Virus record (IMG/VR): IMGVR_UViG_3300023202_000383
Coordinates: 192,508 to 256,507 of that record
DNA length: 64,000 nt
Strand: one strand, 5' to 3'
Every line of letters starts with the position of its first letter. Positions within the stretch are counted from its first letter, which is position 1. Of this stretch, positions 6,732 through 55,921 are shown piece after piece. The notes under the pieces are model-generated. The model saw only the letters and a program-made list of their open reading frames with translations, was not told the origin of the DNA and did not search any database. The position numbers and the translations under genes are program-made.

Positions 6732-6740
6732 TATTTAAGT

Positions 6741-6917: not shown

Positions 6918-6922
6918 ATCAA

Positions 6923-8253: not shown

Positions 8254-8270
8254 AATATATTTGTGGAGGA

Positions 8271-9975: not shown

Positions 9976-10018
9976 TATTGATTGGAGGTTCGAAACTGTG
10001 CTTTGCCATATATTTGAA

Positions 10019-10289: not shown

Positions 10290-10461
10290 ATATATTGATT
10301 TAGTTGGTGGCTGCCTTACCAAGTCGGCCATCCGCCAAAATTCATCGATCATTCGCAATACTCATTCGTTGGGCAAAGAACCACACCATATGGTGCTTTG
10401 CAGTCAGGACACGCTACACGAGCGATTCCCTCATTCCGCACCGACCGTTTCATGGCTTCCT

Positions 10462-10935: not shown

Positions 10936-10959
10936 GTGCTATTAGTTCGGGCAGCTCTA

Positions 10960-11421
10960 TTATGATCCCATTTCAAATCCCATTAATTTGACATTGCTGT
11001 GTGGGGTGTTTGGTTTCTCGTAAATGTTCTCCAAAAACTTATGGTGGAAGTCTTTGGTTGTGTGAATCATCTCGTTGGCTAGCAATGCAACTTCTAGCCA
11101 TGTTGGGTCTTCAACTACGTCGCTCGTGTAAGGTTTGCCACCGCCAGATAACCACCCATGTTGTAATTCTTCAAACACCACTCTTCCTTCAACGGCGATA
11201 TCGTCGAGGTTGCTTAATGGGATTTTAAAAATGTTGTTTTTATATGTCTGGTAATACCCGCAATATATAACCTTGGGTTCAAAAAGAGAATTTTCCATTA
11301 TGTGTCTGATGACAAAGAATCTGTTGATTTTCCAATATAGCCAATTGTCGATGCTATATAATTTGTGGATGATCCAGTCAATAATGTTCGATATTTTGAT
11401 TTCTTTGAATTCAAAATTCAT
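10960..11421 (-). CDS. hypothetical protein
   Basis: 153-aa ORF tightly packed with neighbours. Confidence 0.6.
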   Translation of the reverse strand: MNFEFKEIKISNIIDWIIHKLYSIDNWLYWKINRFFVIRHIMENSLFEPKVIYCGYYQTYKNNIFKIPLSNLDDIAVEGRVVFEELQHGWLSGGGKPYTSDVVEDPTWLEVALLANEMIHTTKDFHHKFLENIYEKPNTPHSNVKLMGFEMGS

Positions 11422-12277
11422 TGATTATTATACCATATATATCGTCGCTGATCATCGTCGGATTTAAACACAATATGTAATTGGCAAGATTAGAGTTGCC
11501 GTGGACAAAATGATTGCACCTTGACAATAGTATAGAGTCCACCAATGCTTCTTTACCCATTTCATACGGGTCGCCAGCCGCATTTGCATGCGGTTCTCCG
11601 TCGTGCAGTCTTATCGCTGGCGTTGTTTGTATTCTTTTGCCGTACCTATCTGACATTCTATTTACCACAACCTGTGCATCTGTTCCGAGCAATATGTTGG
11701 CATCTGGATGCTTGTGCAGATACTTGTCTATTTTGCTCATATATAGATGATATGGCGGATTGCCCACATTAAGCAACTTGTTTAGGTATGGGACACCACC
11801 ATGTATCCTGCCTGGGCCTCTAATATGAACTCCAATTGTGTGACCACTTACTAAGTCACTATTAGAATCTGCTGCAGCAATAATTTCATCCCTAAATGGC
11901 AGATATTTGTTTATTATCTTGTTCGGTTTGTATCGATCTTTAGGTGGCAACAAGATTGTTGCCGGACCGTTGTATCTTTCTGGTTCTGGTATAGTAGGTC
12001 CGGTCCGTCGCATTATTCTATGCTGCGGATATGCTTCGAATATATCGATGTCATTTCTGGTATTGTTCGAGTCTAAAACATCGTTAAATGTGTGGTCTAT
12101 ACGATAAAAATATTGATCCCACGTATCGCCTGGTCCACCGGCGTTGTAATACTTGCTATTCCAATATGGCATTATGATAATATTATTATTGTCACCATAA
12201 GAAAACGCGGTAACTGCTCTACTTATCACAACTCCTATGCCATTGTTGGCAGTAAGTGTAACGCGTAACTTATTCAT
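11411..12277 (-). CDS. NodZ/GT23-like fucosyltransferase
   Basis: TIGVHIRG, ILLGTDAQ, EALVDSILLSRCNHFVHGNSN motifs of the GDP-fucose-using superfamily. Confidence 0.75.
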   Translation of the reverse strand: MNKLRVTLTANNGIGVVISRAVTAFSYGDNNNIIIMPYWNSKYYNAGGPGDTWDQYFYRIDHTFNDVLDSNNTRNDIDIFEAYPQHRIMRRTGPTIPEPERYNGPATILLPPKDRYKPNKIINKYLPFRDEIIAAADSNSDLVSGHTIGVHIRGPGRIHGGVPYLNKLLNVGNPPYHLYMSKIDKYLHKHPDANILLGTDAQVVVNRMSDRYGKRIQTTPAIRLHDGEPHANAAGDPYEMGKEALVDSILLSRCNHFVHGNSNLANYILCLNPTMISDDIYGIIINEF

Positions 12278-12594
12278 TGTGTTAAATTAGACAGGTATCG
12301 TGATATCATTTCTGTATCATATCTCGGTTTATAATATTTATCGATCTTTGATAATTTGATAACCCATTCGATCAGTTCCTGGGGGTTGAAATTGGGGTCT
12401 GTTATGTCATAATCTTTGCGCAGCGGGCACGCTGTCGCCCATCTTTGAACAATAGTTTCACTGTTAGATATCCTAGCGAGTTCATGCCCAATACCAGTTG
12501 CCTTAATTCTAGTATGGTCATTTAATCTCCATACATGTGTGCATGGAAGTTGGTCTGATATAGCACACGCGATTTCTAAGTGGAATTGCTTCAT
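12274..12594 (-). CDS. hypothetical protein, DPxF(D/N)P family
   Basis: YDITDPNFNPQELIEWV. Confidence 0.6.
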   Translation of the reverse strand: MKQFHLEIACAISDQLPCTHVWRLNDHTRIKATGIGHELARISNSETIVQRWATACPLRKDYDITDPNFNPQELIEWVIKLSKIDKYYKPRYDTEMISRYLSNLTQ

Positions 12595-12718
12595 AATGGG
12601 GAGATTACGCTCGCCGCTTTTTGGCCATTGCGAAGTTGGCTATCCATGCCGCCTCCCCGATAACTACTGATACATATGTGCGAAGCACATAATAATTTAT
12701 GTGTCAAACATAACTTAA

Positions 12719-12804
12719 CAGCGGCTGTAGGATTCGAACCTACGTGGGGCTTGTAGCCCTGCAGCTTCAAAGGCTGCCGCGATCGTCCACTCCGCCAAGC
12801 CGCT
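12719..12804 (-). tRNA. long-variable-arm tRNA with Gln (TTG) anticodon
   Basis: AGCGGCT/AGCCGCT+G73; D-arm GCG-GAGTGGACGAT-CGC; GCAGC-CTTTGAA-GCTGC; V-arm GGGCT-ACA-AGCCC; T-arm GTAGG-TTCGAAT-CCTAC. Confidence 0.88.
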
Positions 12805-12814
12805 AGGTGCAAAA

Positions 12815-13505
12815 ATGAGCAAATTAGATAATATTCCAAAAGATAGGTTTATAAAAACATATGAATCGTCTGAATCAATAAGCGATATGCTGCTAAAAAT
12901 GCGGATTAATTGCCGCTGGCGGAAACTATAAGACTCTTAAAAATAGACTCAAAATCTATGATCTTGACTACGACGAGCTTAAAAGCCGAGGACGTAATTC
13001 AGCAAATTCTAAGCTGATTACAAATAAAGGCGTGCCACTAGATGAAATTATGGTGGAAAATTCAACATATAAAAGAAGTAGCTTAAAACATAGGATCATA
13101 AGATCTGGAATAATTCCATATAAATGCGCTATCTGTGACCAGAATTCAACATGGCGCGGCGAGAATCTTACATTAATTCTAGATCATATCAATGGTGTTG
13201 GTAATGATCATAGAAAAGAGAATTTGAGATTCTTATGTCCAAATTGCAACAGCCAAACTCCAACATTTGCTGGTCGGAACATAGATTGGTCTGGTACAAA
13301 AAATAAGTGTGTCGATTGCAATAATATCATTACTAGAAAAGCGTTAAGATGTCCAAAATGTAATAGTATAAATAGGCGTAAAATCGAGTGGCCAGACAAT
13401 TTATCAGATTTGGTTGCTGAGTCGTCTAAATTAGCGGTTGCAAAATCTCTTGGAGTATCTAATGTTGCCGTTGCGAAACGCCTAAAGTATATAAACCAAG
13501 TTTAG
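12815..13505 (+). CDS. HNH homing endonuclease (apparent +1 frameshift at about 12902)
   Basis: CAICDQ...LILDHINGVGNDHRKENLRFLCPNCNSQT. Frame from ATG 12815 joins the 13032 frame if one base at 12902 is removed (KMGLIAAGGNYKTLK). Confidence 0.8.
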
Positions 13506-13517
13506 CTGCCTATTACA

Positions 13518-14183
13518 CTACGGGCCAATAGTGTTAAAACTCTTACATCTGTTCAGTCTCTTGCACGGCGTGCACTTCATGCATCGTTTGTATCCGGTCA
13601 TTTCCACAGTGTGGATGAAGTCTGGGCTTTCACAAACCCATAGTTTATTTAATATCGGTTTATTAAGTTTCTTTTCTATCTTCTTCAAATAGCTTATAAT
13701 GTGACCTTTGTGCGTGTTGATAAATGGCGTATATAGCGTTGGTGTGTGAGTATCTTCAAAGCTCATTAATTCCCAATGCGCTCTAAGCAGGTCTATTATG
13801 TCATTTATGTAATCTCTCGCTTCGTCGCCTCTATTGTATCCAACACAAATCTGATCGGCCTCGTGTTCCCCTGCAGCAAAAGCAGCTGCTTGTATCCACA
13901 GTGGTGGTTGAGAAAAACCATCTTTGGGCCGCCCGTAAACACTGATTTCAGTATTTACGAATTTTACTCTTTTATCGCATATTTGAAGATCTATATGGTA
14001 ATTGTCGTCATAGATCGATTCTAGATATTTTACTACCTGCCTTTCGCACCAGGCTTTGCCCGCATTGGCAGGCGACAGATCTACATATAAAGCGATAATT
14101 TTATCGGTAGTTTCCTCTAGAAGCTTGAAGAAGCAAGCTGTTGAGTCTAGGCCACCCGATAAAAGCAGAATAGTAGTCTTCAT
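13518..14183 (-). CDS. queC: QueC-like PP-loop ATPase (7-cyano-7-deazaguanine synthase family)
   Basis: MKTTILLLSGGLDST PP-loop, C-terminal WVCE...CMKCTPC zinc site; ATG 14183 (the track extension reads through tRNA-Glu). Confidence 0.72.
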   Translation of the reverse strand: MKTTILLLSGGLDSTACFFKLLEETTDKIIALYVDLSPANAGKAWCERQVVKYLESIYDDNYHIDLQICDKRVKFVNTEISVYGRPKDGFSQPPLWIQAAAFAAGEHEADQICVGYNRGDEARDYINDIIDLLRAHWELMSFEDTHTPTLYTPFINTHKGHIISYLKKIEKKLNKPILNKLWVCESPDFIHTVEMTGYKRCMKCTPCKRLNRCKSFNTIGP

Positions 14184-14185
14184 AA

Positions 14186-14257
14186 TGCTCCCAAGGGGAA
14201 TCGAACCCCTATTTCCTGCGTGAAAAGCAGGTGTCCTAGCCGTTAGACGATGGGAGC
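14186..14257 (-). tRNA. tRNA-Glu(TTC)
   Basis: GCTCCCA/TGGGAGC, CCTGC-TTTTCAC-GCAGG, TTCGATT T-loop. Confidence 0.93.
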
Positions 14258-14399
14258 ATATCGCCCCGTGCATACTCAACGGGGCGTTAGTAATAATCCA
14301 ACCTCGCTAGCTGGCTGACCTGGGCAACAGGTACCTTTACAACCCTGCCGGGAACTCCAGCATCGCAAGGATATGAACTTGTCAAAGATCACTTCTTAA

Positions 14400-14471
14400 T
14401 GGGTCAGACCGGGATTGAACCAGTGTCTCACGGGCTTCAACCGTGCGCTCTACCAACTGAGCTACTGACCC
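14400..14471 (-). tRNA. tRNA-Phe(GAA)
   Basis: GGGTCAG/CTGACCC, CACGG-TTGAAGC-CCGTG. Confidence 0.93.
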
Positions 14472-14529
14472 AAGACGCCCTGTGGCGTCTTATGCGATCG
14501 CCTTGTTGGCGATTTTGCTAATATTCTCC

Positions 14530-29507: not shown

Positions 29508-29824
29508 TGAAGAACGTCATGCAAGCCATGGCGGAAGAGCTAGTCCGTAGACTATGCTATTGCGAGCTGGTGCGCAAAAAGTGGCCCTCAAACGGATTCC
29601 CACACTATAGATGGAATAGTGGTATTGGTGGAGAGCATGGTCTCATTGAGGTAATATATTCTGATTGTATATTGGCTGAATTTTGGCCAGACTGCTCCAC
29701 AGTATGGTATCCGAAGTCCAAAGGATGGCATTATATTCTTGAGGACCCAAATTTCGAGCCAGAATTTCTGGTGTACGAAATGTATGCGTACTTGGTTGCA
29801 CACTACCTACTAGGGTCTCGATGA
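29504..29824 (+). CDS. hypothetical protein, DPxF(D/N)P family
   Basis: YILEDPNFEPEFLVYEM. Confidence 0.6.
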   Translation: MMKNVMQAMAEELVRRLCYCELVRKKWPSNGFPHYRWNSGIGGEHGLIEVIYSDCILAEFWPDCSTVWYPKSKGWHYILEDPNFEPEFLVYEMYAYLVAHYLLGSR

Positions 29825-31908
29825 AGTTACCAGAAAACATAGAAGCTAGAGACTACCAGCTCCAGATCATATCCGAAACCATTGAAGCAATCGAGCGTGG
29901 GCATAAGTCTATTTTGATAGTCTCGCCAACTGGATCGGGCAAGACTATTACGGGGCACTTACTTCTGCATGAGCTTTACAATAGATATGGTTACAATGCT
30001 GGGTGGACCTCAATGCGTAGGTTCCTTTGGCGTCAAGCACGTAGATCGAATGAAAAATTGACGAAGTTTCCGCATGTCCGATATTTTAGTCTATTTGATA
30101 AAGACTTTCCAACCGACGTCGATGTGCGAGTGGAAGATGAGTGCCTTCCGGCACCCACTATAATAGAAACGGAAGATGGGCTAAAAACGATTAGAGAAAT
30201 CGTTGATTCAAAATATTCTGGAAGAGTGCTTTCATTCAACGGAACAAACAATGAATGGTGTGAGGTTACTAATTGGTATAAAAGAGACAACGATAAAACT
30301 TGGATTAATCCAACAAGAAACAACCCAAATAAATACACTGACACATTCAAGCAATTGTGGTGTACACCAGATCATACATTATTCTATATTGATGATCCAT
30401 TAAATCCTATCATAAAACAAATTGCAGCCAAAGACATTGCCGGAAAGTATCTTGTTGCAAAACCAACAAATTATAAACGAAACAACATAAATCCTTACTA
30501 TAATAGTGATCAGTTATCGGTCATAATTGGATCTGTCTTGGGTGATGGCTCGGTTGGCAAGTCTGGCAGAGTAAGACTGCAGCATTGCAGTATGCAATCT
30601 GAATATTTAGACTGGAAAGCCAAAATACTTGGTGGCAATAAATCAAGACATGATAAATGGTCTGGATATAGATGGAAGCACGACGGATTTAGAGACAATT
30701 TTGCCGTAACTAGCCAGACATCTAGAATAAGAGATATATGCTACATAAATAATCAAAAGAAAATCACAAACGACATAGTTGAAATGGCGGATATAAAGAC
30801 TGTTGCTATATGGTATATGGATGATGGGAGTATTAGTAGAAAACGTGCAGTGTTCCATACTGAAGGATTCGACAAAGAATCGGTAATAAACTGCCAGAAA
30901 ATATTGGCAAAGTTCGACATAAATAGCAAAATAGCTAAGTCGAAAACAAAATACCATATTATACAATTAAATGTAGAAAATACTAAGAAAATGATGGGAT
31001 TAATATCAAAATACAGATGCTCATCTATGAATTATAAATTTACAGAACATCATGACTTATATAAATGGGACAGCAAAAAATTAGACTTCGGAACAATCAA
31101 AATAAATCATATTAATAATAAACAAGGTAGGGCGATAAAAGGTAGGAAATTGAAGTATGACATAGAAGTCAAAAAGAATCATAACTTTTATGCCAATGGA
31201 TATTTAGTACACAATTGCCACCATAGCGCATGCAATACGTCTATTTGGCAGCGCGAGACCATCGACCCGGCAATTGACATTGGTTTGACGGCTACTAACT
31301 ATCGTACTGACAAGCTGAAGTTGGCTTATAGTAAGGTTGTCAACGGCCCAGATATAGATTTTCTTGTGAATAACGGCTTCTTGAGTCCTTATCACTTCTA
31401 TGCGCTCAGGCAGAGATGGAATGCAGACAACATAGCACGCTTGTATTTGTCGGACGCTGCCAGGTGGGGCAAAAGTGTGATCTTCTTATCCAAGGTGGAC
31501 AACTGCTATAAAGCAATGAATATTTTGTCCGATGCTGGAATAAAATGTGATGTTGTGCATGCTAATAGCGACCAAGAGAACCAGATCGAAGCGTTTATCA
31601 ACAATGACTTGCAAGTTTTGCTGAACGTCTTTGTTCTTACAGAAGGTTTCGACGTACCAGACTTGAAGACCGTATTTGTTAGATCTGCATCAGAGGGGCC
31701 GACAATACAGATGTGTGGACGAGTGCTTCGTACTCATGGCAGCAAAAAATATGCGCAAATAGTCCAGCCGTATTCTGCCAAGCATCCTTTCACCAATATA
31801 GCTGAGGCATCAAAGAAATTGGTGCAGAAGAGAGGCAATTGGGATGAAGTTTCTACGAATTCCTTAGTAGAGATAGCGTCTAAAGCTATATTTAGGAGAA
31901 GATGGTGA
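29821..31908 (+). CDS. SF2 DExH helicase containing an intein
   Basis: RDYQ Q-motif, SPTGSGKT, DE|CHH, GLTAT, LTEGFDVPDL, QMCGRVLR. Confidence 0.9.
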   Translation: MKLPENIEARDYQLQIISETIEAIERGHKSILIVSPTGSGKTITGHLLLHELYNRYGYNAGWTSMRRFLWRQARRSNEKLTKFPHVRYFSLFDKDFPTDVDVRVEDECLPAPTIIETEDGLKTIREIVDSKYSGRVLSFNGTNNEWCEVTNWYKRDNDKTWINPTRNNPNKYTDTFKQLWCTPDHTLFYIDDPLNPIIKQIAAKDIAGKYLVAKPTNYKRNNINPYYNSDQLSVIIGSVLGDGSVGKSGRVRLQHCSMQSEYLDWKAKILGGNKSRHDKWSGYRWKHDGFRDNFAVTSQTSRIRDICYINNQKKITNDIVEMADIKTVAIWYMDDGSISRKRAVFHTEGFDKESVINCQKILAKFDINSKIAKSKTKYHIIQLNVENTKKMMGLISKYRCSSMNYKFTEHHDLYKWDSKKLDFGTIKINHINNKQGRAIKGRKLKYDIEVKKNHNFYANGYLVHNCHHSACNTSIWQRETIDPAIDIGLTATNYRTDKLKLAYSKVVNGPDIDFLVNNGFLSPYHFYALRQRWNADNIARLYLSDAARWGKSVIFLSKVDNCYKAMNILSDAGIKCDVVHANSDQENQIEAFINNDLQVLLNVFVLTEGFDVPDLKTVFVRSASEGPTIQMCGRVLRTHGSKKYAQIVQPYSAKHPFTNIAEASKKLVQKRGNWDEVSTNSLVEIASKAIFRRRW
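30142..31215 (+). mobile_element. intein (358 aa) with LAGLIDADG endonuclease
   Basis: Starts CLPAPTII, ends FYANGYLVHN, +1 Cys; internal IIGSVLGDGS and WYMDDGS motifs. Confidence 0.92.
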
Positions 31909-41061: not shown

Positions 41062-41830
41062 CTTGGAGAGCGGGGATACTAGTGCCTTGCTGTTCAAGCT
41101 CGTAGAGTACTTTGAATCACATGGGTACTCCGTAAATACCAAGAAATTCTGGGTCGACGAATATGCTGGCCACGATGGGCGACATAAGAGAATATATATG
41201 GAGAAAGGAGAGAAACCTCCCACTAAGCCATCCGGTCTAGCAAAAGCATCATATATATCTGTGGTGGCCAAGAAAGAGACTACATCAGTTAGATTCAACG
41301 ATTTTGATAAATCTATTGATCTATATTACTCGACAAAACCACAATCAGAAGGCGGATCATATAGAAAGGTAGCTGGGGCATCGATAGATACCAATAAATT
41401 CTTCTACGAGAGAAATCTCAGATCGCTCCTTGATAAGATTGACACTATCAACAGAACCGGGTCTTTAAAATCGGCCATATTCTCAACCGTCGATTTTGAT
41501 GGCGATAGATTCATACATGGCATTGGTGTTACGACCATAAACAACACAATTTCTTCGGCCAGCGTTAAAGGGATCATCACAATAGATGACAATGGTAATA
41601 TTAGAGAAGTCAAAGATGATCCAGATGCAGATGCATGGTTCCTGATAGAAGTTCAGTACAGATATGTGAATAGGCAGCCTGCAGATATCATAACCGATGG
41701 TTCTAGTTGGGCACCAATACAAAAGAATCAGATAGTGTCTTTAGATCAGAGCATACCAAGGCTTACGCTCATAGATAGGGATTTAATTGAGGAAGCACTG
41801 GCCAGATATGTCAGCAAGCAGAATGGCTAG
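41039..41830 (+). CDS. hypothetical protein, I(I/V)TDGxxW family
   Basis: IDDNGNIREVKDDPDADAWFLIEV...IITDGSSW. Confidence 0.7.
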   Translation: MTYQEAVNLESGDTSALLFKLVEYFESHGYSVNTKKFWVDEYAGHDGRHKRIYMEKGEKPPTKPSGLAKASYISVVAKKETTSVRFNDFDKSIDLYYSTKPQSEGGSYRKVAGASIDTNKFFYERNLRSLLDKIDTINRTGSLKSAIFSTVDFDGDRFIHGIGVTTINNTISSASVKGIITIDDNGNIREVKDDPDADAWFLIEVQYRYVNRQPADIITDGSSWAPIQKNQIVSLDQSIPRLTLIDRDLIEEALARYVSKQNG

Positions 41831-43488
41831 ATCACTATTTGCCACTTCTTTTTGCCAATATCGTGCACTTTTTTGTAACCGTTAGATATAAGTTCAGATT
41901 CGCTCTGGTCTCTTCTTCTATGGTATCTGATGCCATTTCGCATCCAACAATACGTTGGTGGCACATCTTTGATTTTTTGCATTCTCATATGTTCGTAAAC
42001 CTTTCCATCGAACAGCCTATTATCGCTAAATGTTATAAGAGAGCCATTTATCAATTTATTTGATTTTATCCATTTCATTAGGTATGACCAGATCCCATGA
42101 ATTTTTATGGCCGGGTTTCTAGCCATCCTAGATATCTCCCAATCGTCTTTACAATTTATCCCACTAGGCTTTCTTATGGACAAGCATGCTGACAGATTTC
42201 CATAAGCAAATACCCCAATATTATAAGATGCCGGGACACCACCCATGTAATGATACATATCATAAAATAACTTAGCTTCCTGGTTATCTATTAATTTTAT
42301 TTCGCATTTTTGTGGCCTTACTGATCTTGTTGGTTTTGCGCCAATTCCTTTTATAATATCTCGTTTTCTAGATATTTCATCGCCAAACAACTTCAATTTG
42401 CCGACGTTATATAAATCTGATTGTGCGTCTCTTATTTTATCAACTGCGTCTAAAAATATATTATCGTCCCATTTCCATTTAGCCAGATTTATGCATCTAG
42501 CAGTTATTCTAATATTGTCCGATTTATATCCTCTGCGTGAATTAATTCTGTCTATAGATGGAGCAAGCGGGCCTGATATTCTGTTATCTAGCGGCACACC
42601 AGACAATCCGCATCTGAGGATTCCATCCGAACTATGATCCAATATCGTTTGTCTGATATCAGATTCTATTAAGTTGAATTTATATTTTCTAAGTGATCCG
42701 GGGTTTGTGTAGATTCCGTTTATTGCAGATTTTGTTCTTTGTTTTATAGTTTCGTGTTCTGCCCATCCCCAATCTTGGTTATTTTCTGTGTTCAAGCCGT
42801 ATATCGCAGCGCAGGCATCAATATCGTCCCATTTATTTCTACATAGACTATAAGTTAGTGCGACTATTCTAATATTATTTGGTTCATATCCCCTGGCATT
42901 GTCTATTCTATCAATAGACGGAGACAGGGGATCACTCATGGTGTCTAAAAGTTCGACTCCCGTTACAGAACATTTCATGTTGCATTCTTCTAGAATCCTT
43001 CTAACATCTTTTATCCCGATAGAAAATGATTTATGTCCAATTGCAGTTCTGATCTTACCATCTTTGACTTTTTTCCTTTTAGATTCAATAAGTTTGTGTT
43101 CAATTTTCAGACTTGATGGTCTAGTATAATCTGACTTGGAATATTTTTTGTAAGTTAGTTTTTTGCACTCTTTGCATTTACTGTCATAGTGCCATGCAGA
43201 TGTTGGTTCCTTGCAACAAGGAAAGAATGCATCAAAAGGTAATTCTTTTAAACAATTAGAGCATACTTTATGGTCTGGCTGGAGATTATTCTTTTCTTTT
43301 CGCCGCGACACATTCTTTTGTGCAGCAGCTTTTCTAGCATGATATCGCTCTCTTGCTGATTTATTTAGGCAATCTATGCATCTAGCAGTCAACCCATGTT
43401 TTTGCCCCGGCCTTCGTTTCTTTTTTCTAAATTTATCGACAGGAAGGCTATTCAAACATTTAGTACATTTTTTGGTATCTTCTGGCAT
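41827..43488 (-). CDS. homing-endonuclease-like protein: Zn fingers, two HNH-like domains, Hef-like GNAT C-terminus
   Basis: KKCTKC and KVCSNC; two PSIDRI(D/N)...GY..(N)NIRI repeats; KCEIKLID...HYMGG...WEISRM...ITFSDNRLFDGKVY. Confidence 0.75.
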   Translation of the reverse strand: MPEDTKKCTKCLNSLPVDKFRKKKRRPGQKHGLTARCIDCLNKSARERYHARKAAAQKNVSRRKEKNNLQPDHKVCSNCLKELPFDAFFPCCKEPTSAWHYDSKCKECKKLTYKKYSKSDYTRPSSLKIEHKLIESKRKKVKDGKIRTAIGHKSFSIGIKDVRRILEECNMKCSVTGVELLDTMSDPLSPSIDRIDNARGYEPNNIRIVALTYSLCRNKWDDIDACAAIYGLNTENNQDWGWAEHETIKQRTKSAINGIYTNPGSLRKYKFNLIESDIRQTILDHSSDGILRCGLSGVPLDNRISGPLAPSIDRINSRRGYKSDNIRITARCINLAKWKWDDNIFLDAVDKIRDAQSDLYNVGKLKLFGDEISRKRDIIKGIGAKPTRSVRPQKCEIKLIDNQEAKLFYDMYHYMGGVPASYNIGVFAYGNLSACLSIRKPSGINCKDDWEISRMARNPAIKIHGIWSYLMKWIKSNKLINGSLITFSDNRLFDGKVYEHMRMQKIKDVPPTYCWMRNGIRYHRRRDQSESELISNGYKKVHDIGKKKWQIVI

Positions 43489-43631
43489 TTTAAATCCTCT
43501 ATGTGTATTATACATTATATTTGAACGAGGGGACATCGAGGCAGAAGCATCACAATTTTTGCTGAAACGTCGCAGCGCGACAAGACGCTGCAAGAAGTCT
43601 CTCACCGCGTCTCAAAGATAAGGAGAAGCAA

Positions 43632-44864
43632 ATGCGGGTGAAGCAACTTAAAGAAGCGACCATGTTGTGTCGCGAAGCTGGCGTCACAGCTTTCGTATGG
43701 GGCCACCGTGGCGTTGGTAAGTCCTCGATCATTCGGCAGGTCTGCGATGAACACCAGATGGGATGCATCGACCTTCGATGCAGCCAGCTGGAAGCGTCCG
43801 ACCTCCGTGGTCTCCCCGACCGGATCGACGGTCGTACGGTGTTCTGTCCTCCGGAAGACATGCCGCGTGGCGGTCTGTCGTTCGAGGAATACGCCAAGCG
43901 ACTGGAAGACGATCCGGATAACGCCTACAAGCTGGCAGTCGAACTGCAGCCGCAGATCAACAACGGCATCCTGTTCCTGGACGAGTTGAATCGTGCACAA
44001 GATGACGTGATTCAGGCTGTGTTCCAGCTGGTTCTGGACCGCCGCCTGGGTCAGTACGCCCTGCCTCCGGGCTGGTCGGTGGTCGTCGCGGGCAACTACA
44101 TGGAAGGTTACATGACCAACGGGTTCACCGATGCAGCCTTCATCGATCGATTCTGCCACATGCAGCTGTCGGTCGGTGAGTCGACCCTCGAAGAGTGGGT
44201 CAACTACATGTCCAAGGTCCACGAGCAGGGTGCGACGCAGGTGATCGAATTCGCCTCGCAGAATGTCAAGCATCTCGACGGCGAAGTCAAGGGTGAGATG
44301 GGCTTCTCGGTCCAACCCTCCCGACGTTCGTGGGAAGCGGTTGTCCGTGTCGAAGCCGCCTTCAAGGAATCCAAGCACTCCTACTCCGAAGATACCCGCC
44401 ACGCTGTTTTGGCTGGTTTGCTCGGATGGGAACTGGCGACGTCCTATTCGCGATACAACTGCCCGGTCCGTCCAGACATGGTCATCAAGCAGGGTGTCAA
44501 GTCCCTCGAAGGCAAGCTGGCCAAGCTCAACCGCAACCAGCTGACCGGTCTGATGTGGGGCTTGGCTTCCAAGCTCAAGAACAAGGTGGACGAAGAGAAG
44601 GAAGGCAAGATCGCACTGGACTTCGTCCGGTGGATGTGCAAGCACGCGAACGACAAGGATATCGCAGTGGCGTTCTGTAACGTCATGGTCGGCGGTGACG
44701 AGTTCGTCCGCGAGCGGCACGCGATGATCTCCAACCCGAACATCGCCAACCTGTTCAAGAAGTACCGCAACAAGGATGCCAAGAAGACGTTCATCGACCG
44801 TCTGACGGACGATCCGGAACTGCAGGAGCTGGTGTCCCGAACCGCCTGGGGCAAGGAGAAGTAA
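43632..44864 (+). CDS. MoxR/dynein-related AAA+ ATPase (AAA_5-like)
   Basis: WGHRGVGKS Walker A, DLRGLP, ILFLDELNRA Walker B, AFIDRF, PSRRSWE. Confidence 0.9.
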   Translation: MRVKQLKEATMLCREAGVTAFVWGHRGVGKSSIIRQVCDEHQMGCIDLRCSQLEASDLRGLPDRIDGRTVFCPPEDMPRGGLSFEEYAKRLEDDPDNAYKLAVELQPQINNGILFLDELNRAQDDVIQAVFQLVLDRRLGQYALPPGWSVVVAGNYMEGYMTNGFTDAAFIDRFCHMQLSVGESTLEEWVNYMSKVHEQGATQVIEFASQNVKHLDGEVKGEMGFSVQPSRRSWEAVVRVEAAFKESKHSYSEDTRHAVLAGLLGWELATSYSRYNCPVRPDMVIKQGVKSLEGKLAKLNRNQLTGLMWGLASKLKNKVDEEKEGKIALDFVRWMCKHANDKDIAVAFCNVMVGGDEFVRERHAMISNPNIANLFKKYRNKDAKKTFIDRLTDDPELQELVSRTAWGKEK

Positions 44865-51013: not shown

Positions 51014-52516
51014 TTACCGCTCGTAGACAAATCTTAACTTCTTGCTACCCCATACCTTCACATAGCCATTTGTTTCAGCGTATTCACGCTCTTTCATTTT
51101 CATCTTCACAGCACGCTGATAGAGCGTTTTCTTATGCATTGTCCACCCATTCTCATCAGTATACCAATAACTTGGTGGTACATCTCCGTCGGGCTTGAAA
51201 TTCAACGACTTATACACAGCACCATCATGATTAAAAGTGGTATCACAATACGATATTATTAACTTGTACTTATCTGGCAGTTTTTTTAGACACCTGCTAA
51301 CAAACCACGACGCGAAATTCTTCTTCTGATAGCGAGGGTGAATACATAACCTAGATAATTCGCGGCATTCTTTCTTCTTATATCTGCCAGTCCTAATATT
51401 GTGACGTACCAACGGTGAAAAAACGCAAACAGCAATCAACTCTTCTTCAAGATAGGCACCATAACAAATTCCGCCTCGACCAGCATCGGATAGGTAATGA
51501 TATTTCGAAAGAAGAAGCCTGTATTCGCTAGCTGGACAGTCATTAATTTCTACATTATTGAAATCGTATTCGACAGTATTCAGTTTAGTAATTCCGAGCC
51601 AATATTTGAGCAATTCGACCACTTTATTATAATTGTGAAATTCATGCTCCCAAATGCATTTCAATTCGTACTGATTTGGGAAGTTATTTGCGACGTATGA
51701 TGCCTTCCGTTTATCATTAGCATGCCCTCGATCTGTAGAATGCCAGTATTCGCCTTGGCATTCTATAAGGAGATCTGGTGCGTTCTGCCTAGGGATGACG
51801 CAATCAAAGCTATATGGCCCGATTTTGGTCTGTAAATCGTCTTGTTTGCTATTGTGCTCTCTGTAATAAGAAATATTTAAGTCGTCTAGGATAGAATAGA
51901 GTGTTTCTTGTATAGATGAGACCTTTGGCATATTATCTCTAGCTAGAGACAAGGACTCGCAGATTTTGGCTCTATATTCGGGATTCTCCCATGACTTTTT
52001 AGTTGCTTCTGATATCTTACGCCTATATTCTTGATTCCCCCACGCCTCTTTGGATACCTGCCCCAAAATTTCTGTCATTTTGTCTCTGTATTTCCCATCC
52101 AACCACCTCTTTTTGCCGAGTTCTGACATCTTTTGTTTAAATTCTGGGGTAACTTTCTTGCGGTTAATCTCTGTCATTCTTTCAGCGAAATCGTCACTCT
52201 GCCTAAAAGCACTCATCCTGTCTCGTAATTCAGGATCATTCCAAATTTCTTTGCTATTGGTTACAATTTTGTTTCTATACCTATCATCCTTCCATGCTTC
52301 TTTTGCTCCTTTCCTAGATGCTTTTCTTTTCTCTGGATCGTTTGCTACACACTTGGCGCATTCCCATGGTATTTGATTTCTTATAACCTCGGATTTCTTG
52401 CGAATGGATTTTGTGCCCTCGCTGCCGCAATTATCACATTCAACGACTACCTTTGGCCTATGTCCAGATAGATCTATTCTATTAAATTTTTCTAGCGTCT
52501 TATTCCAATTTATCAT
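51014..52516 (-). CDS. endonuclease-GNAT fusion (Vsr/DUF559-like PD-(D/E)xK plus Mom-like acetyltransferase)
   Basis: Basic W-repeat N-terminus; YSFDCVIP..LIECQGEYWH..ELKCIWEHE; ELSRLCIHPRYQKKNFASWFVSRC..IISYCDTTFNHDGAVYK. Confidence 0.75.
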   Translation of the reverse strand: MINWNKTLEKFNRIDLSGHRPKVVVECDNCGSEGTKSIRKKSEVIRNQIPWECAKCVANDPEKRKASRKGAKEAWKDDRYRNKIVTNSKEIWNDPELRDRMSAFRQSDDFAERMTEINRKKVTPEFKQKMSELGKKRWLDGKYRDKMTEILGQVSKEAWGNQEYRRKISEATKKSWENPEYRAKICESLSLARDNMPKVSSIQETLYSILDDLNISYYREHNSKQDDLQTKIGPYSFDCVIPRQNAPDLLIECQGEYWHSTDRGHANDKRKASYVANNFPNQYELKCIWEHEFHNYNKVVELLKYWLGITKLNTVEYDFNNVEINDCPASEYRLLLSKYHYLSDAGRGGICYGAYLEEELIAVCVFSPLVRHNIRTGRYKKKECRELSRLCIHPRYQKKNFASWFVSRCLKKLPDKYKLIISYCDTTFNHDGAVYKSLNFKPDGDVPPSYWYTDENGWTMHKKTLYQRAVKMKMKEREYAETNGYVKVWGSKKLRFVYER

Positions 52517-52732
52517 AATTTATTTTTGAGCCGTGATATGGCAATATGGTTATTGTCTTTTAAATACAATATCAGTTGTTGCGCGACAACAAACGCTTCA
52601 CAGCAAGCTAGAAATGCGTCAACACATCAAAAATAACTCATTGGATTCGCGAAGCCGTTTTGTGCCAATTGTTGCCGCCATGCTGCAGCGACACAGCAGC
52701 GTGTGAGGGAACGTCTTTCTGGAGAACATGCT

Positions 52733-54361
52733 ATGATGACACCTGAGGAAAAGTTGGTAGCTGCACGATGTCGTTTGATGACACGTGAGCCATGGTACGG
52801 GCATATGGCCATGATGATCACGTGGAAGAAGTCCGACATGAATTGGGTCGATGATGAAGCGGCCCGATCGATCGGCATTAAGATCGCCAGCACCGGCGAG
52901 ATTACTGCTTACTGGTATCAGGATTGGGTTGAGCGGATGTCGCTCAAGCAGATCTACGGTACTATCGAACACATGATCAATCACCTGGTTCGCCTGCACC
53001 CGGTTCGGGCTGGTGAGCATGAGAAGGCTCCGTGGAACATCGCGACCGACATGGCCGTAAATGGTTCTGCCAACAGCCCCCACATCGGATATAAGGACGA
53101 GAACGGCAAGACCGTCCTCCCTTGCTCATATGATGTGTCCAAGGGAAGCGACACCTGGACAATCCCCAACTACGACGACGCTTTGGTGTTCGCAGACAAG
53201 AAGGGGATCGGCGTCGACAATGTTAAGCCGCACGGCGACAGTCTCGTGTTCGTGCCCAATGACTGGCCTAGTGACGAATCAGCCGAATTCTACTACGAGA
53301 AGTTGATCGAGCAATTCGGTGACGATGGCCAGCAGGGCCAGCAGGGCCAGCAGTGCGATGGTGAAGGCCAGGACCAATGCCAAACGTGCGGTGGCAGCGG
53401 GCAAGCTCCCGACGACGAAGATGGCGACGAAGACCAGCAGGGCCAAGGCCAAGGTCAGGGTCAGGATGATGACCAGCAGGGCCAGGGCCAAGGCCAAGGT
53501 CAGGGTCAGGATGATGACCAGCAGGGCCAGGGTGGTGGCGGTGGCCAACCCCAGGGCGAATGCAGCGACAGCAGCGGTGAAAGTGATGGTCAGGGAAGCG
53601 GCAGCCCGTGCCCCGATTGTCAGGGAACCGGCAAGGAAGGCGGTCAAAGCGGCGGCAACGGCCAGGCCAAGCACAACTACGGCCCATTCCAGAATAACGC
53701 TGTCGACGACCACAGCACGTGGACACAGTCCGATATCAGCCACGACGAGGCACGGCAGCTGGTCCATGATATGGTCAAGGAAGCGACCGACAAGAGCCAG
53801 GGTCACACACCCGGTCACTTGGCACAGGCGATCGACGAACTCAAGAAACCGATCGTCCGGTGGCGTGAAATCCTGCGTCAGATCATCGGCACGCACGTTG
53901 GCAACCGTCGCAAGACGTATGCCCGACGCAACCGCCGATATGATATCTGGGGTATCAAGGGCATCAGCCATCACGCAGCCGCAACCGTGTCGGTGATCAT
54001 CGACACGTCCGGATCAATCGGAACCAAGGAACTGGAACAGTTCTTCGGTGAAATCGAGGCGATCAGTTACCGTGCCAAGGTCAACGTTCTGCAGTGGGAC
54101 CACGCATTCCAGGGCTTCGACCAGTACCGCCGAGGTGACTGGAAGAAGATCACTGCTAATGGACGTGGGGGCACGGATATGGCAGCCCCGGTCAAGTGGT
54201 TAGAAGAGAATGGCCAGGTCGCTGATCTGCAGATTATGCTGACCGATGGCTATTGCAATTGGCCCGCGCCACGTGAGTATCCGATGGTGTTCTGCATCAC
54301 GACCGACAATACTTCGGAACCTGAGTGGGGTGTGTCGATCCGCATGAAGATCACTGAGTGA
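52733..54361 (+). CDS. DUF2201-type metallopeptidase-like plus VWA domain protein (AAA partner)
   Basis: WNIATDMAVN, VDDHSTW, VRWREILR, IIDTSGSI MIDAS, GRGGTD, IMLTDG. Confidence 0.88.
   Translation: MMTPEEKLVAARCRLMTREPWYGHMAMMITWKKSDMNWVDDEAARSIGIKIASTGEITAYWYQDWVERMSLKQIYGTIEHMINHLVRLHPVRAGEHEKAPWNIATDMAVNGSANSPHIGYKDENGKTVLPCSYDVSKGSDTWTIPNYDDALVFADKKGIGVDNVKPHGDSLVFVPNDWPSDESAEFYYEKLIEQFGDDGQQGQQGQQCDGEGQDQCQTCGGSGQAPDDEDGDEDQQGQGQGQGQDDDQQGQGQGQGQGQDDDQQGQGGGGGQPQGECSDSSGESDGQGSGSPCPDCQGTGKEGGQSGGNGQAKHNYGPFQNNAVDDHSTWTQSDISHDEARQLVHDMVKEATDKSQGHTPGHLAQAIDELKKPIVRWREILRQIIGTHVGNRRKTYARRNRRYDIWGIKGISHHAAATVSVIIDTSGSIGTKELEQFFGEIEAISYRAKVNVLQWDHAFQGFDQYRRGDWKKITANGRGGTDMAAPVKWLEENGQVADLQIMLTDGYCNWPAPREYPMVFCITTDNTSEPEWGVSIRMKITE
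53432..53533 (+). repeat. imperfect tandem repeat encoding (DDDQQGQGQGQGQ)n
   Basis: GACCAGCAGGGCCA...GGTCAGGGTCAGGATGAT units repeated. Confidence 0.85.
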
Positions 54362-54403
54362 TATCCATGTGATGACCGCAGCCATGTCGGTCAAATATAT
54401 TTC

Positions 54404-55921
54404 ATGATCGATTGGGAAGCAAGCAAAGCTGAGTTCGGAACCACCATGGGTCTAAAAGGCAATAGACCCATGGTGGTTGTTTTATGTGACAAGTGCAAGT
54501 CTAAAGGATCTATTCGGATTCGCAACAAATCTCTGATCAAAAAGACTGGCGACCGCACATGGCTGTGTAGATCATGCGTGAATAACCAACCTAACAAGAT
54601 AGCAAAACTTAAGAATGCTTCTAAAAAATTATGGGAAAATGATAAGTATAGATCAAAAAATTTAAGCTCAGTCAGAAGTGCAGAAAATCGCAAAAAGCTT
54701 AGCGACAATTGGTATAAAAATATGAAATCAATTGTCGCCAGTGACGAATATAAATCAAAGCAAAGAAAATCATCAATCAAATCATGGCGTGATAGTAAGT
54801 ATGCAAGCAAGATTATCAAGTCATCAACAGAGATGTGGAATAATGCTTCTTTACGTGACAAGATGTTGTCATCTAGAAGAACTGATAAATATAGAGAGAA
54901 TCAGCGTATAAAGGCAATAGAACGGTGGCAAGACCCTAATTATATAAAGAAGCAGGACTCTGCAAAAGCTAGAGCGGTTAGATCACCAGAGAACTTGGCG
55001 AAATTGCGAGCCAACCAGAAAAAAGTGTCATCAATACAAAATATGTTGTATTCAATCCTCGATGATTTAGAAGTTAAATATTATAGAGAATACAATGATA
55101 AAATAGATGATCACGAGGTCAAGATTGGTCCATATAACTTCGACTGTTTGGTGCCACGTGACAACAAGCCAGACTTGCTAATAGAATGTCAGGGCGAATA
55201 CTGGCATTCTATTAGAGAAGGCAGCGATAAAGCTAAAGCATCATATATATCAAACAACCACAGCGATAAGTATGAGCTTAAATATATATGGGAGCATGAA
55301 TTTCATAATAAGAATAGAGTTGTTGAGCTTGTTAAATATTGGTTAGGCATTGCCGCGATTGACTCAATAGAATTCGATTTTGATTCAGTTGAGATAAGAA
55401 AATGTCCACCAAAAGATTATAAACTTTTGCTTGGCAAATATCATTATCTTCCAACAGCAGGTCGCGGTGGCATCGCTTTTGGTGCATATTTGGAGTCCGG
55501 GTTAATAGCTGTATGTATTTTTTCTCCGATGCCTCGGCAAAACATGCCATATAATAATAAATCGCATAGAGAATTGTCTAGGTTATGTATTCACCCTCGC
55601 TACCAGAAGAAGAATTTTGCGTCGTGGTTTGTGTCGCGGTGTATCAAATTGCTACCGACAAAATACAAAACAATAATATCATATTGTGATACTACATTCA
55701 ACCATGATGGGGCGGTCTATAAAGCATGCAATTTCAAATTGGATGGTGAAGTTAAGCCAGATTATTGGTATGCTAGCAAAAGCGGCTGGATTATGCATAA
55801 AAGAACAATGTATGGGCATGCAACAAAGATGAAGAAAAATGAATCCGATTATGCCAAAGAGATGGGCTACAAGAAAATATGGGGCAGCAAGAAATTAAGA
55901 TTTGTTTTTGACAGATCATGA
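54404..55921 (+). CDS. endonuclease-GNAT fusion, paralog of 51014-52516
   Basis: YNFDCLVP..LIECQGEYWH..IWEHE; ELSRLCIHPRYQKKNFASWFVSRC..IISYCDTTFNHDGAVYK identical to the paralog. Confidence 0.75.
   Translation: MIDWEASKAEFGTTMGLKGNRPMVVVLCDKCKSKGSIRIRNKSLIKKTGDRTWLCRSCVNNQPNKIAKLKNASKKLWENDKYRSKNLSSVRSAENRKKLSDNWYKNMKSIVASDEYKSKQRKSSIKSWRDSKYASKIIKSSTEMWNNASLRDKMLSSRRTDKYRENQRIKAIERWQDPNYIKKQDSAKARAVRSPENLAKLRANQKKVSSIQNMLYSILDDLEVKYYREYNDKIDDHEVKIGPYNFDCLVPRDNKPDLLIECQGEYWHSIREGSDKAKASYISNNHSDKYELKYIWEHEFHNKNRVVELVKYWLGIAAIDSIEFDFDSVEIRKCPPKDYKLLLGKYHYLPTAGRGGIAFGAYLESGLIAVCIFSPMPRQNMPYNNKSHRELSRLCIHPRYQKKNFASWFVSRCIKLLPTKYKTIISYCDTTFNHDGAVYKACNFKLDGEVKPDYWYASKSGWIMHKRTMYGHATKMKKNESDYAKEMGYKKIWGSKKLRFVFDRS

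What the first reader, a model, noticed from the sequence alone, without database searches (positions are those of the whole stretch)
51014..55921. Inverted pair of nuclease plus Mom-like acetyltransferase fusions flanking the VWA gene
Seen: two 500-aa paralogs point outward on either side of the GC-rich VWA gene. They share a Zn-knuckle start, basic Trp-repeat helices, a Vsr/DUF559-like nuclease (FDC...LIECQGEYWH...IWEHE) and a C-terminal domain with long identical blocks (ELSRLCIHPRYQKKNFASWFVSRC, IISYCDTTFNHDGAVYK). Known (from memory): that pattern matches the Mu Mom GNAT family, which modifies adenine in DNA and blocks restriction. Inference: a single-polypeptide cut-and-protect element, either a homing endonuclease that self-immunises or a phage restriction-modification weapon against competing DNA. 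The inverted pair resembles a composite element able to carry or invert the VWA gene.
Basis: partly seen in the sequence, partly recalled or inferred. Interest (0 to 1): 0.75.

Follow-up and report, generated by a model that had tools for sequence, protein, structure and literature searches.

The report
Hef-type homing endonuclease genes flanking VWA
The two genes are real and are members of the known Hef-type family of selfish phage homing endonucleases, whose cutting domain is always followed by a domain resembling the DNA-modifying enzyme Mom; what that second domain does is still untested.

Summary
Gene A (51014-52516, minus, 500 aa) and gene B (54404-55921, plus, 505 aa) are 50% identical. 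They point away from a GC-rich VWA gene (52703-54361).

Each protein has four parts:
- a four-cysteine zinc ribbon;
- basic Trp/Tyr-Arg-Lys helical repeats;
- a Vsr-like nuclease, whose best structural match is the homing endonuclease I-Bth0305I;
- a C-terminal GNAT domain, whose best match in the PDB is phage Mu Mom.

They are not a special pair. The 256.5 kb jumbo-phage record holds at least ten full paralogs with swapped N-terminal DNA-binding modules. Related phages have or lack such genes between the same conserved neighbours. The core is homologous to Hef-type homing endonucleases of T4-like and Campylobacter phages (profile comparison 99%).

Mom-nuclease fusions in jumbo phages were already described in 2021 and read as restriction plus protection. 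So this is a new member of a known kind.

The composite or invertible-element idea is not supported. The arms are about 70% identical and the longest shared word is 26 nt. A and B are not sister genes, and no inverted form was seen.

The Mom-like pocket is strongly conserved, but A and B have Thr where Mom has its essential Arg151. "Cut and protect" therefore remains open and untested.

The parts
51014..52516 (-). Gene A, a 500-aa Hef-type homing endonuclease. Approximate parts: zinc ribbon aa 1-60, helical repeats 61-195, Vsr-like nuclease 196-312, Mom-like GNAT 313-500.
   Evidence: ORF. Pfam Mom E 1.3e-17 and PHROG 3339 'homing endonuclease'. The core profile matches residues 196-500.
51017..51583 (-). 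Mom-like GNAT domain of A
   Evidence: Pfam PF25680 matches residues 322-498. Alignment to Mu Mom keeps H58, Y59, R111, D149 and Y159; R151 is Thr.
51584..51931 (-). Vsr-like (EDxHD-type) nuclease domain of A
   Evidence: Carries the Asp (FDC), Glu...His (IECQGEYWH), Asp-Lys and WEHE motifs, aligned with B and the other paralogs.
52703..54361 (+). VWA gene: DUF2201_N metallopeptidase-like domain plus DUF2201 VWA domain. It is the cochaperone half of a MoxR-vWA pair and a conserved neighbour, not cargo.
   Evidence: Pfam hits. The pairing with the ATPase gene is conserved in L013, L015, L016 and L019. The pair is described for group 2.2 jumbo phages in PMC7824862.
53312..53640 (+). GC-rich Gln/Gly/Asp low-complexity insert inside the VWA gene. 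It includes a perfect 45-bp tandem duplication (53438-53527).
   Evidence: Repeat families D1-D3. Public assemblies break here.
54404..55921 (+). Gene B, a 505-aa Hef-type homing endonuclease. Parts: zinc ribbon aa 1-60, helical repeats 61-204, Vsr-like nuclease 205-322, Mom-like GNAT 323-505.
   Evidence: ORF. AlphaFold model with mean pLDDT 90.7. Pfam Mom E 5e-19.
55016..55369 (+). Vsr-like (EDxHD-type) nuclease domain of B
   Evidence: The domain model's top hits are 3r3p (I-Bth0305I, Z 11.7), 1cw0 (Vsr, Z 10.2) and 3hrl (Z 10.1). The sequence profile hits 3r3p at E 1.3e-5. D247, G264, H268, D275, K278, W296 and E297 are invariant.
55370..55918 (+). Mom-like GNAT domain of B, with a two-helix insertion before the last strands
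   Evidence: Best PDB match is Mu Mom 8bv8: Foldseek E 1.7e-9 and VIA Z 15.2 over 156 residues. H347, Y348, R393, S407, D429 and Y439 are invariant.
54439..54478 (+). Perfect 16-bp stem with an 8-nt loop, followed by a T-run, 35 nt inside the ORF of B. It looks like an intrinsic terminator. Its role is unknown.
   Evidence: Found. dG is -29.5 kcal/mol. It is absent at this place in the other nine paralogs and in three relatives.
41827..43605 (-). Third family member in the window (592 aa). It has zinc ribbons, two Endo VII/HNH-like modules and a Mom-like C-terminal domain, but no Vsr-like domain.
   Evidence: PHROG 3322/1035 at E 1e-26 to 1e-29 on residues 102-261. PHROG 559/3339 on residues 406-589. 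Weak Pfam Mom hit. A homologue occupies the same place in L015.
43632..44864 (+). MoxR-like AAA+ ATPase gene, the conserved partner of the VWA gene
   Evidence: Pfam AAA families and PHROG 1297 'ATPase' E 6e-57. It lies next to the VWA gene in L013 and L016.

Best explanation
A and B are two of at least ten free-standing Hef-type homing endonuclease genes. These are selfish genes that have settled in intergenic sites of a roughly 256 kb T4-related jumbo phage, here on either side of the conserved MoxR-VWA chaperone genes.

Inferred mechanism:
1. The variable N-terminal part (a zinc ribbon and basic helical repeats in A and B; zinc-ribbon/DUF723/HTH modules in other copies) picks a long DNA target in or near the neighbouring conserved gene.
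2. The Vsr-like EDxHD nuclease cuts a co-infecting relative that lacks the gene.
3. Recombinational repair copies the endonuclease gene, and flanking DNA, into the cut genome.

The C-terminal Mom-like GNAT domain is an obligate part of the catalytic core of the whole Hef family. I think it most likely holds or distorts DNA at the cut site, through its basic cleft, its helix-turn-helix-like insertion and possibly a flipped base in the conserved pocket. Acyl or aminoacyl transfer to adenine is a live alternative.

Shown here: the domain identities, family membership, copy number, purifying selection and presence/absence among relatives. Inferred: cleavage, homing and the role of the Mom-like domain.
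For: Nuclease:
- Its best structural and sequence matches in the PDB are the homing endonuclease I-Bth0305I, then Vsr.
- The counterparts of I-Bth0305I D196, H213 and D222 are invariant.

Link to Hef:
- B aligns with Campylobacter phage Hef58 across the nuclease and the C-terminal domain.
- An own-genome paralog is 35% identical (E 2e-46) to the Hef-like gene that sits between nrdA and nrdB in a T4-like phage.
- A profile-profile comparison of the two C-terminal domain sets gives 99% probability, E 2.7e-18.
- PMC3239194 places Hef-type enzymes in the Vsr-like EDxHD family. PMC2988022 states that U5 Hef cleaves nrdB.

Selfish-element signature:
- There are ten full paralogs plus fragments in one genome.
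- The core is constant and the N-terminal modules are swapped.
- All copies are AT-rich, 32-40% GC.

Presence/absence among relatives:
- L013 and L016 have ATPase and VWA adjacent, with no such gene.
- L015 has one where A is. L019 has one where B is.
- L020 has one between two genes that are 89 bp apart in this genome.

Selection and prior annotation:
- About half of the identical residues between A and B use different codons, which points to old paralogs under purifying selection in both domains.
- PHROG 3339 'homing endonuclease' matches B almost end to end.
Against: - No cleavage site or homing event was observed, and the targets are unknown.
- The relatives are too diverged (VWA 43-58% identical at the protein level) to show co-conversion tracts.
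- The Mom-like pocket is far better conserved than a plain DNA-binding role needs. H58, R111, S124 and Y159 are near-invariant in two clades. This favours catalysis or specific ligand binding.
- The published reading of these fusions is restriction plus momylation (PMC7824862), not homing.
- The homodimer prediction gave no answer.
Confidence: 0.8

Rival explanations
1. Cut-and-protect enzyme. The Mom-like domain is an active acyl or aminoacyl transferase that modifies adenine at or near the enzyme's own target, using an aminoacyl-tRNA as Mu Mom does. The carrier genome is then immune while unmodified competitor DNA is cut. This is a self-immunising homing endonuclease.
For: - The Mom pocket is conserved. 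H347, Y348, R393, S407, D429 and Y439 are invariant in 71 homologues of B.
- In 120 canonical Hef proteins H58, R111, S124, R151 and Y159 are kept in 118-120.
- The two-helix insertion that Mom needs for activity is present (PMC13219725).
- Mom is the best PDB match.
- No stand-alone Mom exists in the genome, so any such activity would come from these proteins.
Against: - Each clade lacks one residue that Mu Mom needs. R151 is Thr in A, B and at least 90% of their clade. D149 is Asn in 111 of 120 canonical Hefs. R151A and D149A cripple Mom (PMC13219725).
- Ten paralogs would each need a matching modification specificity.
- From my memory of the abstract of Sandegren et al. 2005, which I could not read here, Hef also cuts DNA of its own phage in vitro.
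Confidence: 0.22
2. Phage restriction-modification weapon, as proposed for jumbo-phage Mom-REase fusions. Momylation protects the whole phage genome, and the fused nuclease degrades host or superinfecting DNA in a largely sequence-unspecific way.
For: This is the published inference for the same architecture in group 2 jumbo phages (PMC7824862). A nuclease and a Mom-family domain share one polypeptide.
Against: - Ten diverged copies carry different long DNA-binding modules.
- The genes show intergenic presence/absence between conserved genes.
- They are homologous to Hef and I-Bth0305I, which are site-specific homing enzymes.
- One Mom-essential residue is missing in each clade.
Confidence: 0.08
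3. Composite mobile or invertible element. The inverted pair A/B moves or flips the VWA gene by recombination between the two copies.
For: The orientation is inverted on either side of one gene. One 72-nt block is 64/72 identical.
Against: - The arms are only 71-72% identical, and the longest exact shared word is 26 nt.
- A and B are not sister genes in the tree.
- Relatives have A-like or B-like genes singly, beside a VWA gene in the same orientation.
- No recombinase domain is found in A, B or VWA.
- Contigs from three runs cross A into VWA and VWA into B, with no strand-changing joint (contigs only, so rare forms could be missed).
Confidence: 0.02

Closest known systems
Hef-type homing endonucleases. 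Examples: Hef of T-even-like phage U5; Hef-like genes of T4-like, Campylobacter (Hef58/59), RaK2 and LIMEstone (F-LimVII) phages.
   Same: - The same constant core: a Vsr-like nuclease directly followed by the same C-terminal domain (hhalign 99%; BLASTP).
- Free-standing genes between conserved genes.
- Several copies per genome.
- Variable zinc-ribbon or HTH N-termini.
   Different: - A and B belong to a diverged, so far purely metagenomic clade, only 24-29% identical to cultured-phage Hefs.
- Their C-terminal domain is closer to Mom: Pfam Mom matches above threshold, with 'HY' and 'CDTT' in place of the canonical 'HL' and 'NRR'.
- They carry a different N-terminal repeat module.
I-Bth0305I (PDB 3R3P), prototype of the EDxHD / Vsr-like homing endonuclease family
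   Same: It is the best structural and profile match of the nuclease domain, and the catalytic Asp, His and Asp are conserved. It also has a modular N-terminal DNA-binding region.
   Different: I-Bth0305I is intron-encoded, 266 aa long, and ends with the nuclease domain. It has no Mom-like domain (PMC3239194).
Phage Mu Mom (PDB 8BV8), the Gly-tRNA-dependent N6-adenine modifying GNAT
   Same: - GNAT fold with the extra two-helix insertion, and the best PDB match.
- Pfam family match.
- Counterparts of H58, Y59, R111, S124, D149 and Y159 are kept.
   Different: - Only about 15% identical.
- Fused behind a nuclease instead of standing alone.
- The essential R151 is Thr.
- There is no com-like regulator.
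- There are ten copies per genome.
- Activity is unknown.
Mom-REase fusion proteins of group 2 jumbo phages (Iyer et al. 2021, PMC7824862)
   Same: This appears to be the very architecture and phage group described. The same paper also describes the neighbouring MoxR-vWA pair with an N-terminal metallopeptidase.
   Different: That paper reads them as a restriction-plus-protection system and mentions neither Hef nor homing. The evidence here (copy number, modular N-termini, empty sites, Hef homology) points to homing endonucleases.

Membership tests
EDxHD / Vsr-like homing endonucleases (Hef type) | Nuclease domain with the Vsr-like variant of the restriction-endonuclease fold | tested here: met
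   The domain model (pLDDT 88.8) matches 3r3p at Z 11.7, 1cw0 at Z 10.2 and 3hrl at Z 10.1. Foldseek's top hit is 3r3p with TM 0.74.
EDxHD / Vsr-like homing endonucleases (Hef type) | Conserved catalytic residues: Asp (I-Bth0305I D196), His (H213) and Asp (D222), with Asn/His at position 208 | tested here: met
   B D247, H268 and D275 are invariant in 71 and in 66 sequences. Gln, Asn, Asp or His occupies the position-208 equivalent.
EDxHD / Vsr-like homing endonucleases (Hef type) | Sequence homology to Hef proteins across the nuclease and the C-terminal domain | tested here: met
   E 4e-13; E 2e-46 for an own-genome paralog; hhalign 99%.
EDxHD / Vsr-like homing endonucleases (Hef type) | Free-standing gene with presence/absence polymorphism between conserved genes | tested here: met
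   L013 and L016 are empty. L015, L019 and L020 are occupied. The L020 site is empty in the own genome, with an 89-bp gap.
EDxHD / Vsr-like homing endonucleases (Hef type) | Site-specific double-strand cleavage near its own locus, and homing in mixed infection | not testable with these tools
   This needs enzyme assays or phage crosses. It is known only for U5 Hef, from the literature (PMC2988022).
Mom family (PF25680), DNA adenine-modifying GNAT | Match to the family profile above the curated threshold | tested here: met
   64.5 bits (A) and 69.1 bits (B) against a cut-off of 27.1.
Mom family (PF25680), DNA adenine-modifying GNAT | GNAT fold with a helix-turn-helix-like insertion before the last strand | tested here: met
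   8bv8 is the top hit and covers chain residues 37-222. Helices 466-475 and 480-486 lie between strands in the model.
Mom family (PF25680), DNA adenine-modifying GNAT | Essential residues R111, S124, D149 and R151 of Mu Mom | tested here: not met
   R111, D149 and probably S124 are kept. R151 is Thr in A, in B and in at least 90% of their clade. It is Arg in six other paralogs of the same genome.
Mom family (PF25680), DNA adenine-modifying GNAT | Aminoacyl-tRNA-dependent modification of N6 of adenine in double-stranded DNA | not testable with these tools
   This needs nucleoside LC-MS or an in vitro assay.
Composite transposon / invertible segment | Long, near-identical inverted repeats and a recombinase | tested here: not met
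   The arms are 71-72% identical and the longest exact word is 26 nt. No recombinase domain is found in A, B or VWA.
Composite transposon / invertible segment | Both orientations present in the population | tested here: inconclusive
   No strand-changing joints in three runs, but only assembled contigs were available.
Single-polypeptide restriction-modification enzyme | Catalytically competent modification domain that protects self DNA from the fused nuclease | tested here: inconclusive
   The pocket is largely conserved, but one Mom-essential residue is replaced in each clade. There are no biochemical data.

The most novel reading that the evidence does not exclude
Hef-type homing endonucleases, several thousand proteins including A and B, may be bifunctional. 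Their Mom-like domain would use an aminoacyl-tRNA or another acyl donor to mark adenines at the enzyme's own target, giving the carrier genome chemical immunity to its own selfish nuclease. This would be a homing endonuclease with a built-in epigenetic antidote. It would also explain why Hef-type enzymes can cut unmodified copies of their own locus in vitro.
Probability: 0.2. Interest if true: 0.8.

Novelty: new member of a known kind. Interest (0 to 1): 0.4.

Why it matters
On its own this is an ordinary, if well-preserved, cluster of selfish endonuclease genes in a jumbo phage.

Its value is that it joins two literatures that do not cite each other: Hef-type homing endonucleases, and the 'Mom-REase fusions' of jumbo phages. 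In both clades sampled here (71 relatives of A and B, 120 canonical Hefs), the Hef core carries a Mom-like GNAT domain with a strongly conserved pocket. The searches found about 500 and 2,500 relatives respectively.

Mom was shown in 2026 to be a tRNA-dependent DNA aminoacyl transferase. The function of this domain in a widespread class of homing endonucleases can therefore now be tested directly.

Tried and rejected
- Megablast of the locus against cultured phages found nothing.
- NCBIfam gave no meaningful family for A, B, a canonical paralog, the 592-aa member or VWA.
- The homodimer prediction for B's nuclease-plus-Mom core gave no answer and is not evidence either way.
- hhalign of canonical Hef C-terminal domains directly against the single Mu Mom sequence was weak (3.6%, E 0.012). 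The A/B clade against Mu Mom was modest (31%, E 5e-4). The Mom link rests on Pfam, on structure, and on the strong A/B-to-Hef profile match.
- Sandegren et al. 2005 is not in the held library. What I say about Hef cutting its own DNA is from memory.
- Literature searches for Mom + Vsr + GNAT, and for Hef-like + GNAT, found no paper that names the Hef C-terminal domain as Mom-like. One GenBank annotation does read 'putative nuclease/acetyltransferase'.
- Recent duplication or gene conversion between A and B was rejected. Half of the identical residues use different codons, and the tree separates the two genes.
- Proximity of GC-rich islands to Hef-like genes gives p about 0.03 if counted naively, but about 0.24 when the linked islands are merged. 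I treat it as not shown.
Full report
**The observation**

The window is the last 64 kb of a 256,507-bp IMG/VR virus record.

- ORF A (51014-52516, minus strand, 500 aa) and ORF B (54404-55921, plus strand, 505 aa) lie on either side of a 552-aa ORF (52703-54361, plus strand). Both point away from it.
- A and B are 50% identical over their whole length.
- The middle gene carries Pfam DUF2201_N (a putative metallopeptidase) and DUF2201 (VWA-like). It is 57.4% GC in a 41.1% GC genome.

**Domain anatomy**

An AlphaFold2 model of B, built on 71 homologues, has mean pLDDT 90.7. It shows four parts.

1. A small beta-hairpin zinc ribbon. Its four cysteines (28, 31, 55, 58) are invariant or at least 90% conserved.
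2. About 140 residues of helical hairpins. They carry a repeated Trp...Tyr-Arg-x-Lys motif and have no Pfam family apart from sub-threshold GerD hits.
3. An alpha/beta nuclease domain, residues about 205-322.
4. A GNAT domain, residues about 323-505.

The nuclease domain was folded on its own (pLDDT 88.8).
- By structure it best matches the catalytic domain of the homing endonuclease I-Bth0305I (3r3p: Z 11.7, Foldseek TM 0.74). E. coli Vsr (1cw0, Z 10.2) and a DUF559-like protein (3hrl, Z 10.1) follow.
- A sequence profile of the domain also finds 3r3p first among PDB sequences (E 1.3e-5).
- The counterparts of the I-Bth0305I active-site residues D196, H213 and D222 are invariant. They are B D247, H268 and D275.

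For the GNAT domain, the best hit in the whole PDB is phage Mu Mom (8bv8).
- Foldseek gives E 1.7e-9. VIA gives Z 15.2 over 156 residues.
- Pfam's Mom family matches at more than twice its gathering score.

**Comparison with the Mom active site**

Mu Mom transfers glycine from Gly-tRNA(Gly) to N6 of adenine in double-stranded DNA.
- R111, S124 and R151 are essential, and D149A is strongly impaired.
- H58, Y59, Y159 and W181 matter.
- A helix-turn-helix-like insertion (about residues 175-209) is required (PMC13219725).

I aligned Mu Mom (L012:1378-2103) with the paralogs.
- A and B keep H58/Y59 (the 'HY' motif), R111 (in 'ELSRL'), D149 and Y159.
- A serine invariant in 71 sequences sits one residue out of register with S124, at the start of the equivalent helix.
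- The two-helix insertion is present.
- R151, however, is Thr in A and B, and in at least 90% of their clade ('CDTT').

So the domain belongs to the Mom family by profile and by fold, but it fails one tested catalytic criterion.

**Not a pair but a multigene family**

BLASTP and phmmer against all ORFs of the record find ten full-length paralogs. In genome coordinates they start at about 33.7, 36.8, 63.3, 67.9, 75.5, 111.3, 190.4, 234.3, 243.5 (A) and 246.9 kb (B). There are also fragments at about 41.1-41.9 and 113.5 kb.

- The paralogs share the nuclease-plus-Mom-like core. Their N-terminal modules differ: zinc ribbon plus helical repeats, or DUF4379/DUF723 zinc-ribbon repeats, or an HTH.
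- One member lies in the window just upstream of the ATPase gene (41827-43605, minus strand). It has the Mom-like domain behind two Endo VII/HNH-like modules, and it has no Vsr-like domain.
- All copies are AT-rich, 32-40% GC.
- There is no stand-alone Mom gene in the record.
- Between A and B, about half of the identical residues use different codons. DNA identity is 0.50, 0.67 and 0.67 for the N-terminal, nuclease and Mom-like parts. The longest shared exact word is 26 nt.
- In a maximum-likelihood tree of 49 core sequences, A and B fall in different groups, with many metagenomic proteins between them.

They are old paralogs under purifying selection in both domains, not a recent inverted duplication.

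**Evidence of mobility**

The VWA gene and the AAA+ ATPase gene at 43632-44864 form the MoxR-vWA pair described for T4-related 'group 2.2' jumbo phages (PMC7824862). Related phages arrange this region as follows.

| Locus | Arrangement |
|---|---|
| L013, L016 | ATPase and VWA directly adjacent, no endonuclease gene |
| L015 | 415-aa family member on the minus strand between ATPase and VWA, where A is; a homologue of the 592-aa gene upstream of the ATPase |
| L019 | 500-aa member, 57% identical to B, directly downstream of VWA, where B is; nothing A-like upstream |

A separate case is L020. It is syntenic with own-genome region 90-104 kb. There a 545-aa member sits between a helicase gene and an intein-bearing gene. 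The orthologues of those two genes are separated by only 89 bp in this genome.

This mosaic of occupied and empty intergenic sites between conserved genes is the classic signature of free-standing homing endonuclease genes.

**Relation to known families**

- PHROG 3339 ('homing endonuclease') matches B nearly end to end.
- tblastn against cultured phages finds weak matches (24-29% identity) that span both domains. The hits are 'Hef-like homing endonucleases' of Campylobacter phages, with four to six copies per genome, and of Caulobacter phage Cr30 and others.
- B aligns with Hef58 of phage NCTC12673 across both domains (E 4e-13).
- Own-genome paralog 63349-65016 is 35% identical (E 2e-46) to the Hef-like gene of T4-like phage N2. 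That gene sits between nrdA and nrdB, the locus of the original hef of phage U5 (PMC2988022).
- A profile of the A/B-clade Mom-like domain matches a profile of canonical Hef C-terminal domains at 99% probability, E 2.7e-18, over 165 columns.
- Taylor et al. place Hef-type enzymes in the Vsr-like EDxHD family together with I-Bth0305I (PMC3239194).
- The canonical Hef family is large: 2,504 database proteins at E <= 1e-5. Sources name them 'Hef-like homing endonuclease', and in one case 'putative nuclease/acetyltransferase'.
- The A/B clade adds about 500 more, all metagenomic.
- Iyer et al. [quoted passage not shown] They interpreted these as restriction plus protective momylation (PMC7824862).

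**What the Mom-like domain does**

In 120 canonical Hef proteins, the Mom-site residues are as follows.

| Mu Mom residue | In 120 canonical Hef proteins |
|---|---|
| H58 | kept in 119 |
| Y59 | Leu in 116 |
| R111 | kept in 119 |
| S124 | kept in 118 |
| D149 | Asn in 111, Asp in 9 |
| R151 | kept in 120 |
| Y159 | kept in 120 |

In the A/B clade all are kept except R151, which is Thr.

- The pocket is therefore under strong constraint in both clades. This argues for a real biochemical role, either catalysis or binding of a specific ligand such as a flipped base.
- Each clade nevertheless lacks one residue that Mu Mom needs. This argues against an identical reaction.
- The variable N-termini presumably supply target specificity, so the constant nuclease-plus-Mom-like unit looks like the catalytic engine.
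- The Mom-like module also occurs behind a different nuclease type in the 592-aa protein. This suggests it is a portable accessory of such endonucleases.

I favour a role in DNA holding or distortion, or in assembly, at the cut site. I put about 0.2 on true cut-and-protect chemistry. These tools cannot decide between the two.

**The composite or inversion idea**

- The arms are 71-72% identical.
- No recombinase domain is present.
- The A-like and B-like positions are occupied independently in other phages.
- Contigs from three public runs that hold this phage run from A into VWA and from VWA into B, with no strand-changing joints. They break only at a 45-bp tandem repeat inside the VWA gene.
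- Contigs cannot exclude rare forms, but nothing supports inversion or joint mobility.

**Verdict**

The genes are new members of a known kind: Hef-type, Vsr-like homing endonucleases with a Mom-like domain. They sit in a jumbo phage that carries at least ten of them. The function of the Mom-like domain is the one open and testable question.

Noticed in passing
window 54439-54478: A perfect 16-bp stem with an 8-nt loop, followed by a T-run, lies 35 nt inside the ORF of B and 78 nt after the VWA stop codon (dG -29.5 kcal/mol). It looks like an intrinsic terminator. It is absent from the other nine paralogs and from three relatives. It may limit read-through into the endonuclease gene. In L019 a weaker hairpin instead covers the start codon.
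   Followed up: partly
window 41827-43605 (-): A 592-aa protein joins zinc ribbons and two tandem Endo VII/HNH-like modules (motif 'SIDRI[DN]', with Arg where HNH motifs, as I recall them, have His) to a Mom-like domain that keeps HY, R111, the D-x-R motif and Y159. It has no Vsr-like nuclease. A homologue sits at the same place in L015.
   Followed up: partly
window 53312-53640, inside the VWA gene: A Gln/Gly/Asp-rich low-complexity insert contains two CxxCxGxG motifs, which from my own knowledge resemble the DnaJ zinc-finger motif, and a perfect 45-bp tandem duplication. It makes this VWA protein about 90-150 aa longer than its relatives. Public assemblies break at this point.
   Followed up: partly
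window 29821-31908 (+): A DNA helicase ORF has a LAGLIDADG homing-endonuclease match in its middle (residues 230-409), which suggests an intein. Related contig L020 also has inteins in its terminase gene and in one other gene.
   Followed up: no
window 3859-14472 (-): Nine tRNA genes lie here (Tyr, Asp, Ile, Trp, Ala x2, Gln, Glu, Phe). None is tRNA-Gly, the co-substrate of Mu Mom.
   Followed up: no
G000 29.2-32.5, 115.5-117.2, 236-237.7, 242.5-243.7 and 245-247 kb: Five of the seven GC-rich islands (over 52% GC in a 41% genome) lie within 2 kb of a Hef-like gene. These include the ATPase and VWA genes. This could reflect DNA imported by endonuclease-driven co-conversion. The association is not significant once the linked islands are merged (p about 0.24).
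   Followed up: partly
G000 41125-41920 and 113542-113898: Short ORFs match parts of the Hef-like core. They are probably decayed copies of the family.
   Followed up: no
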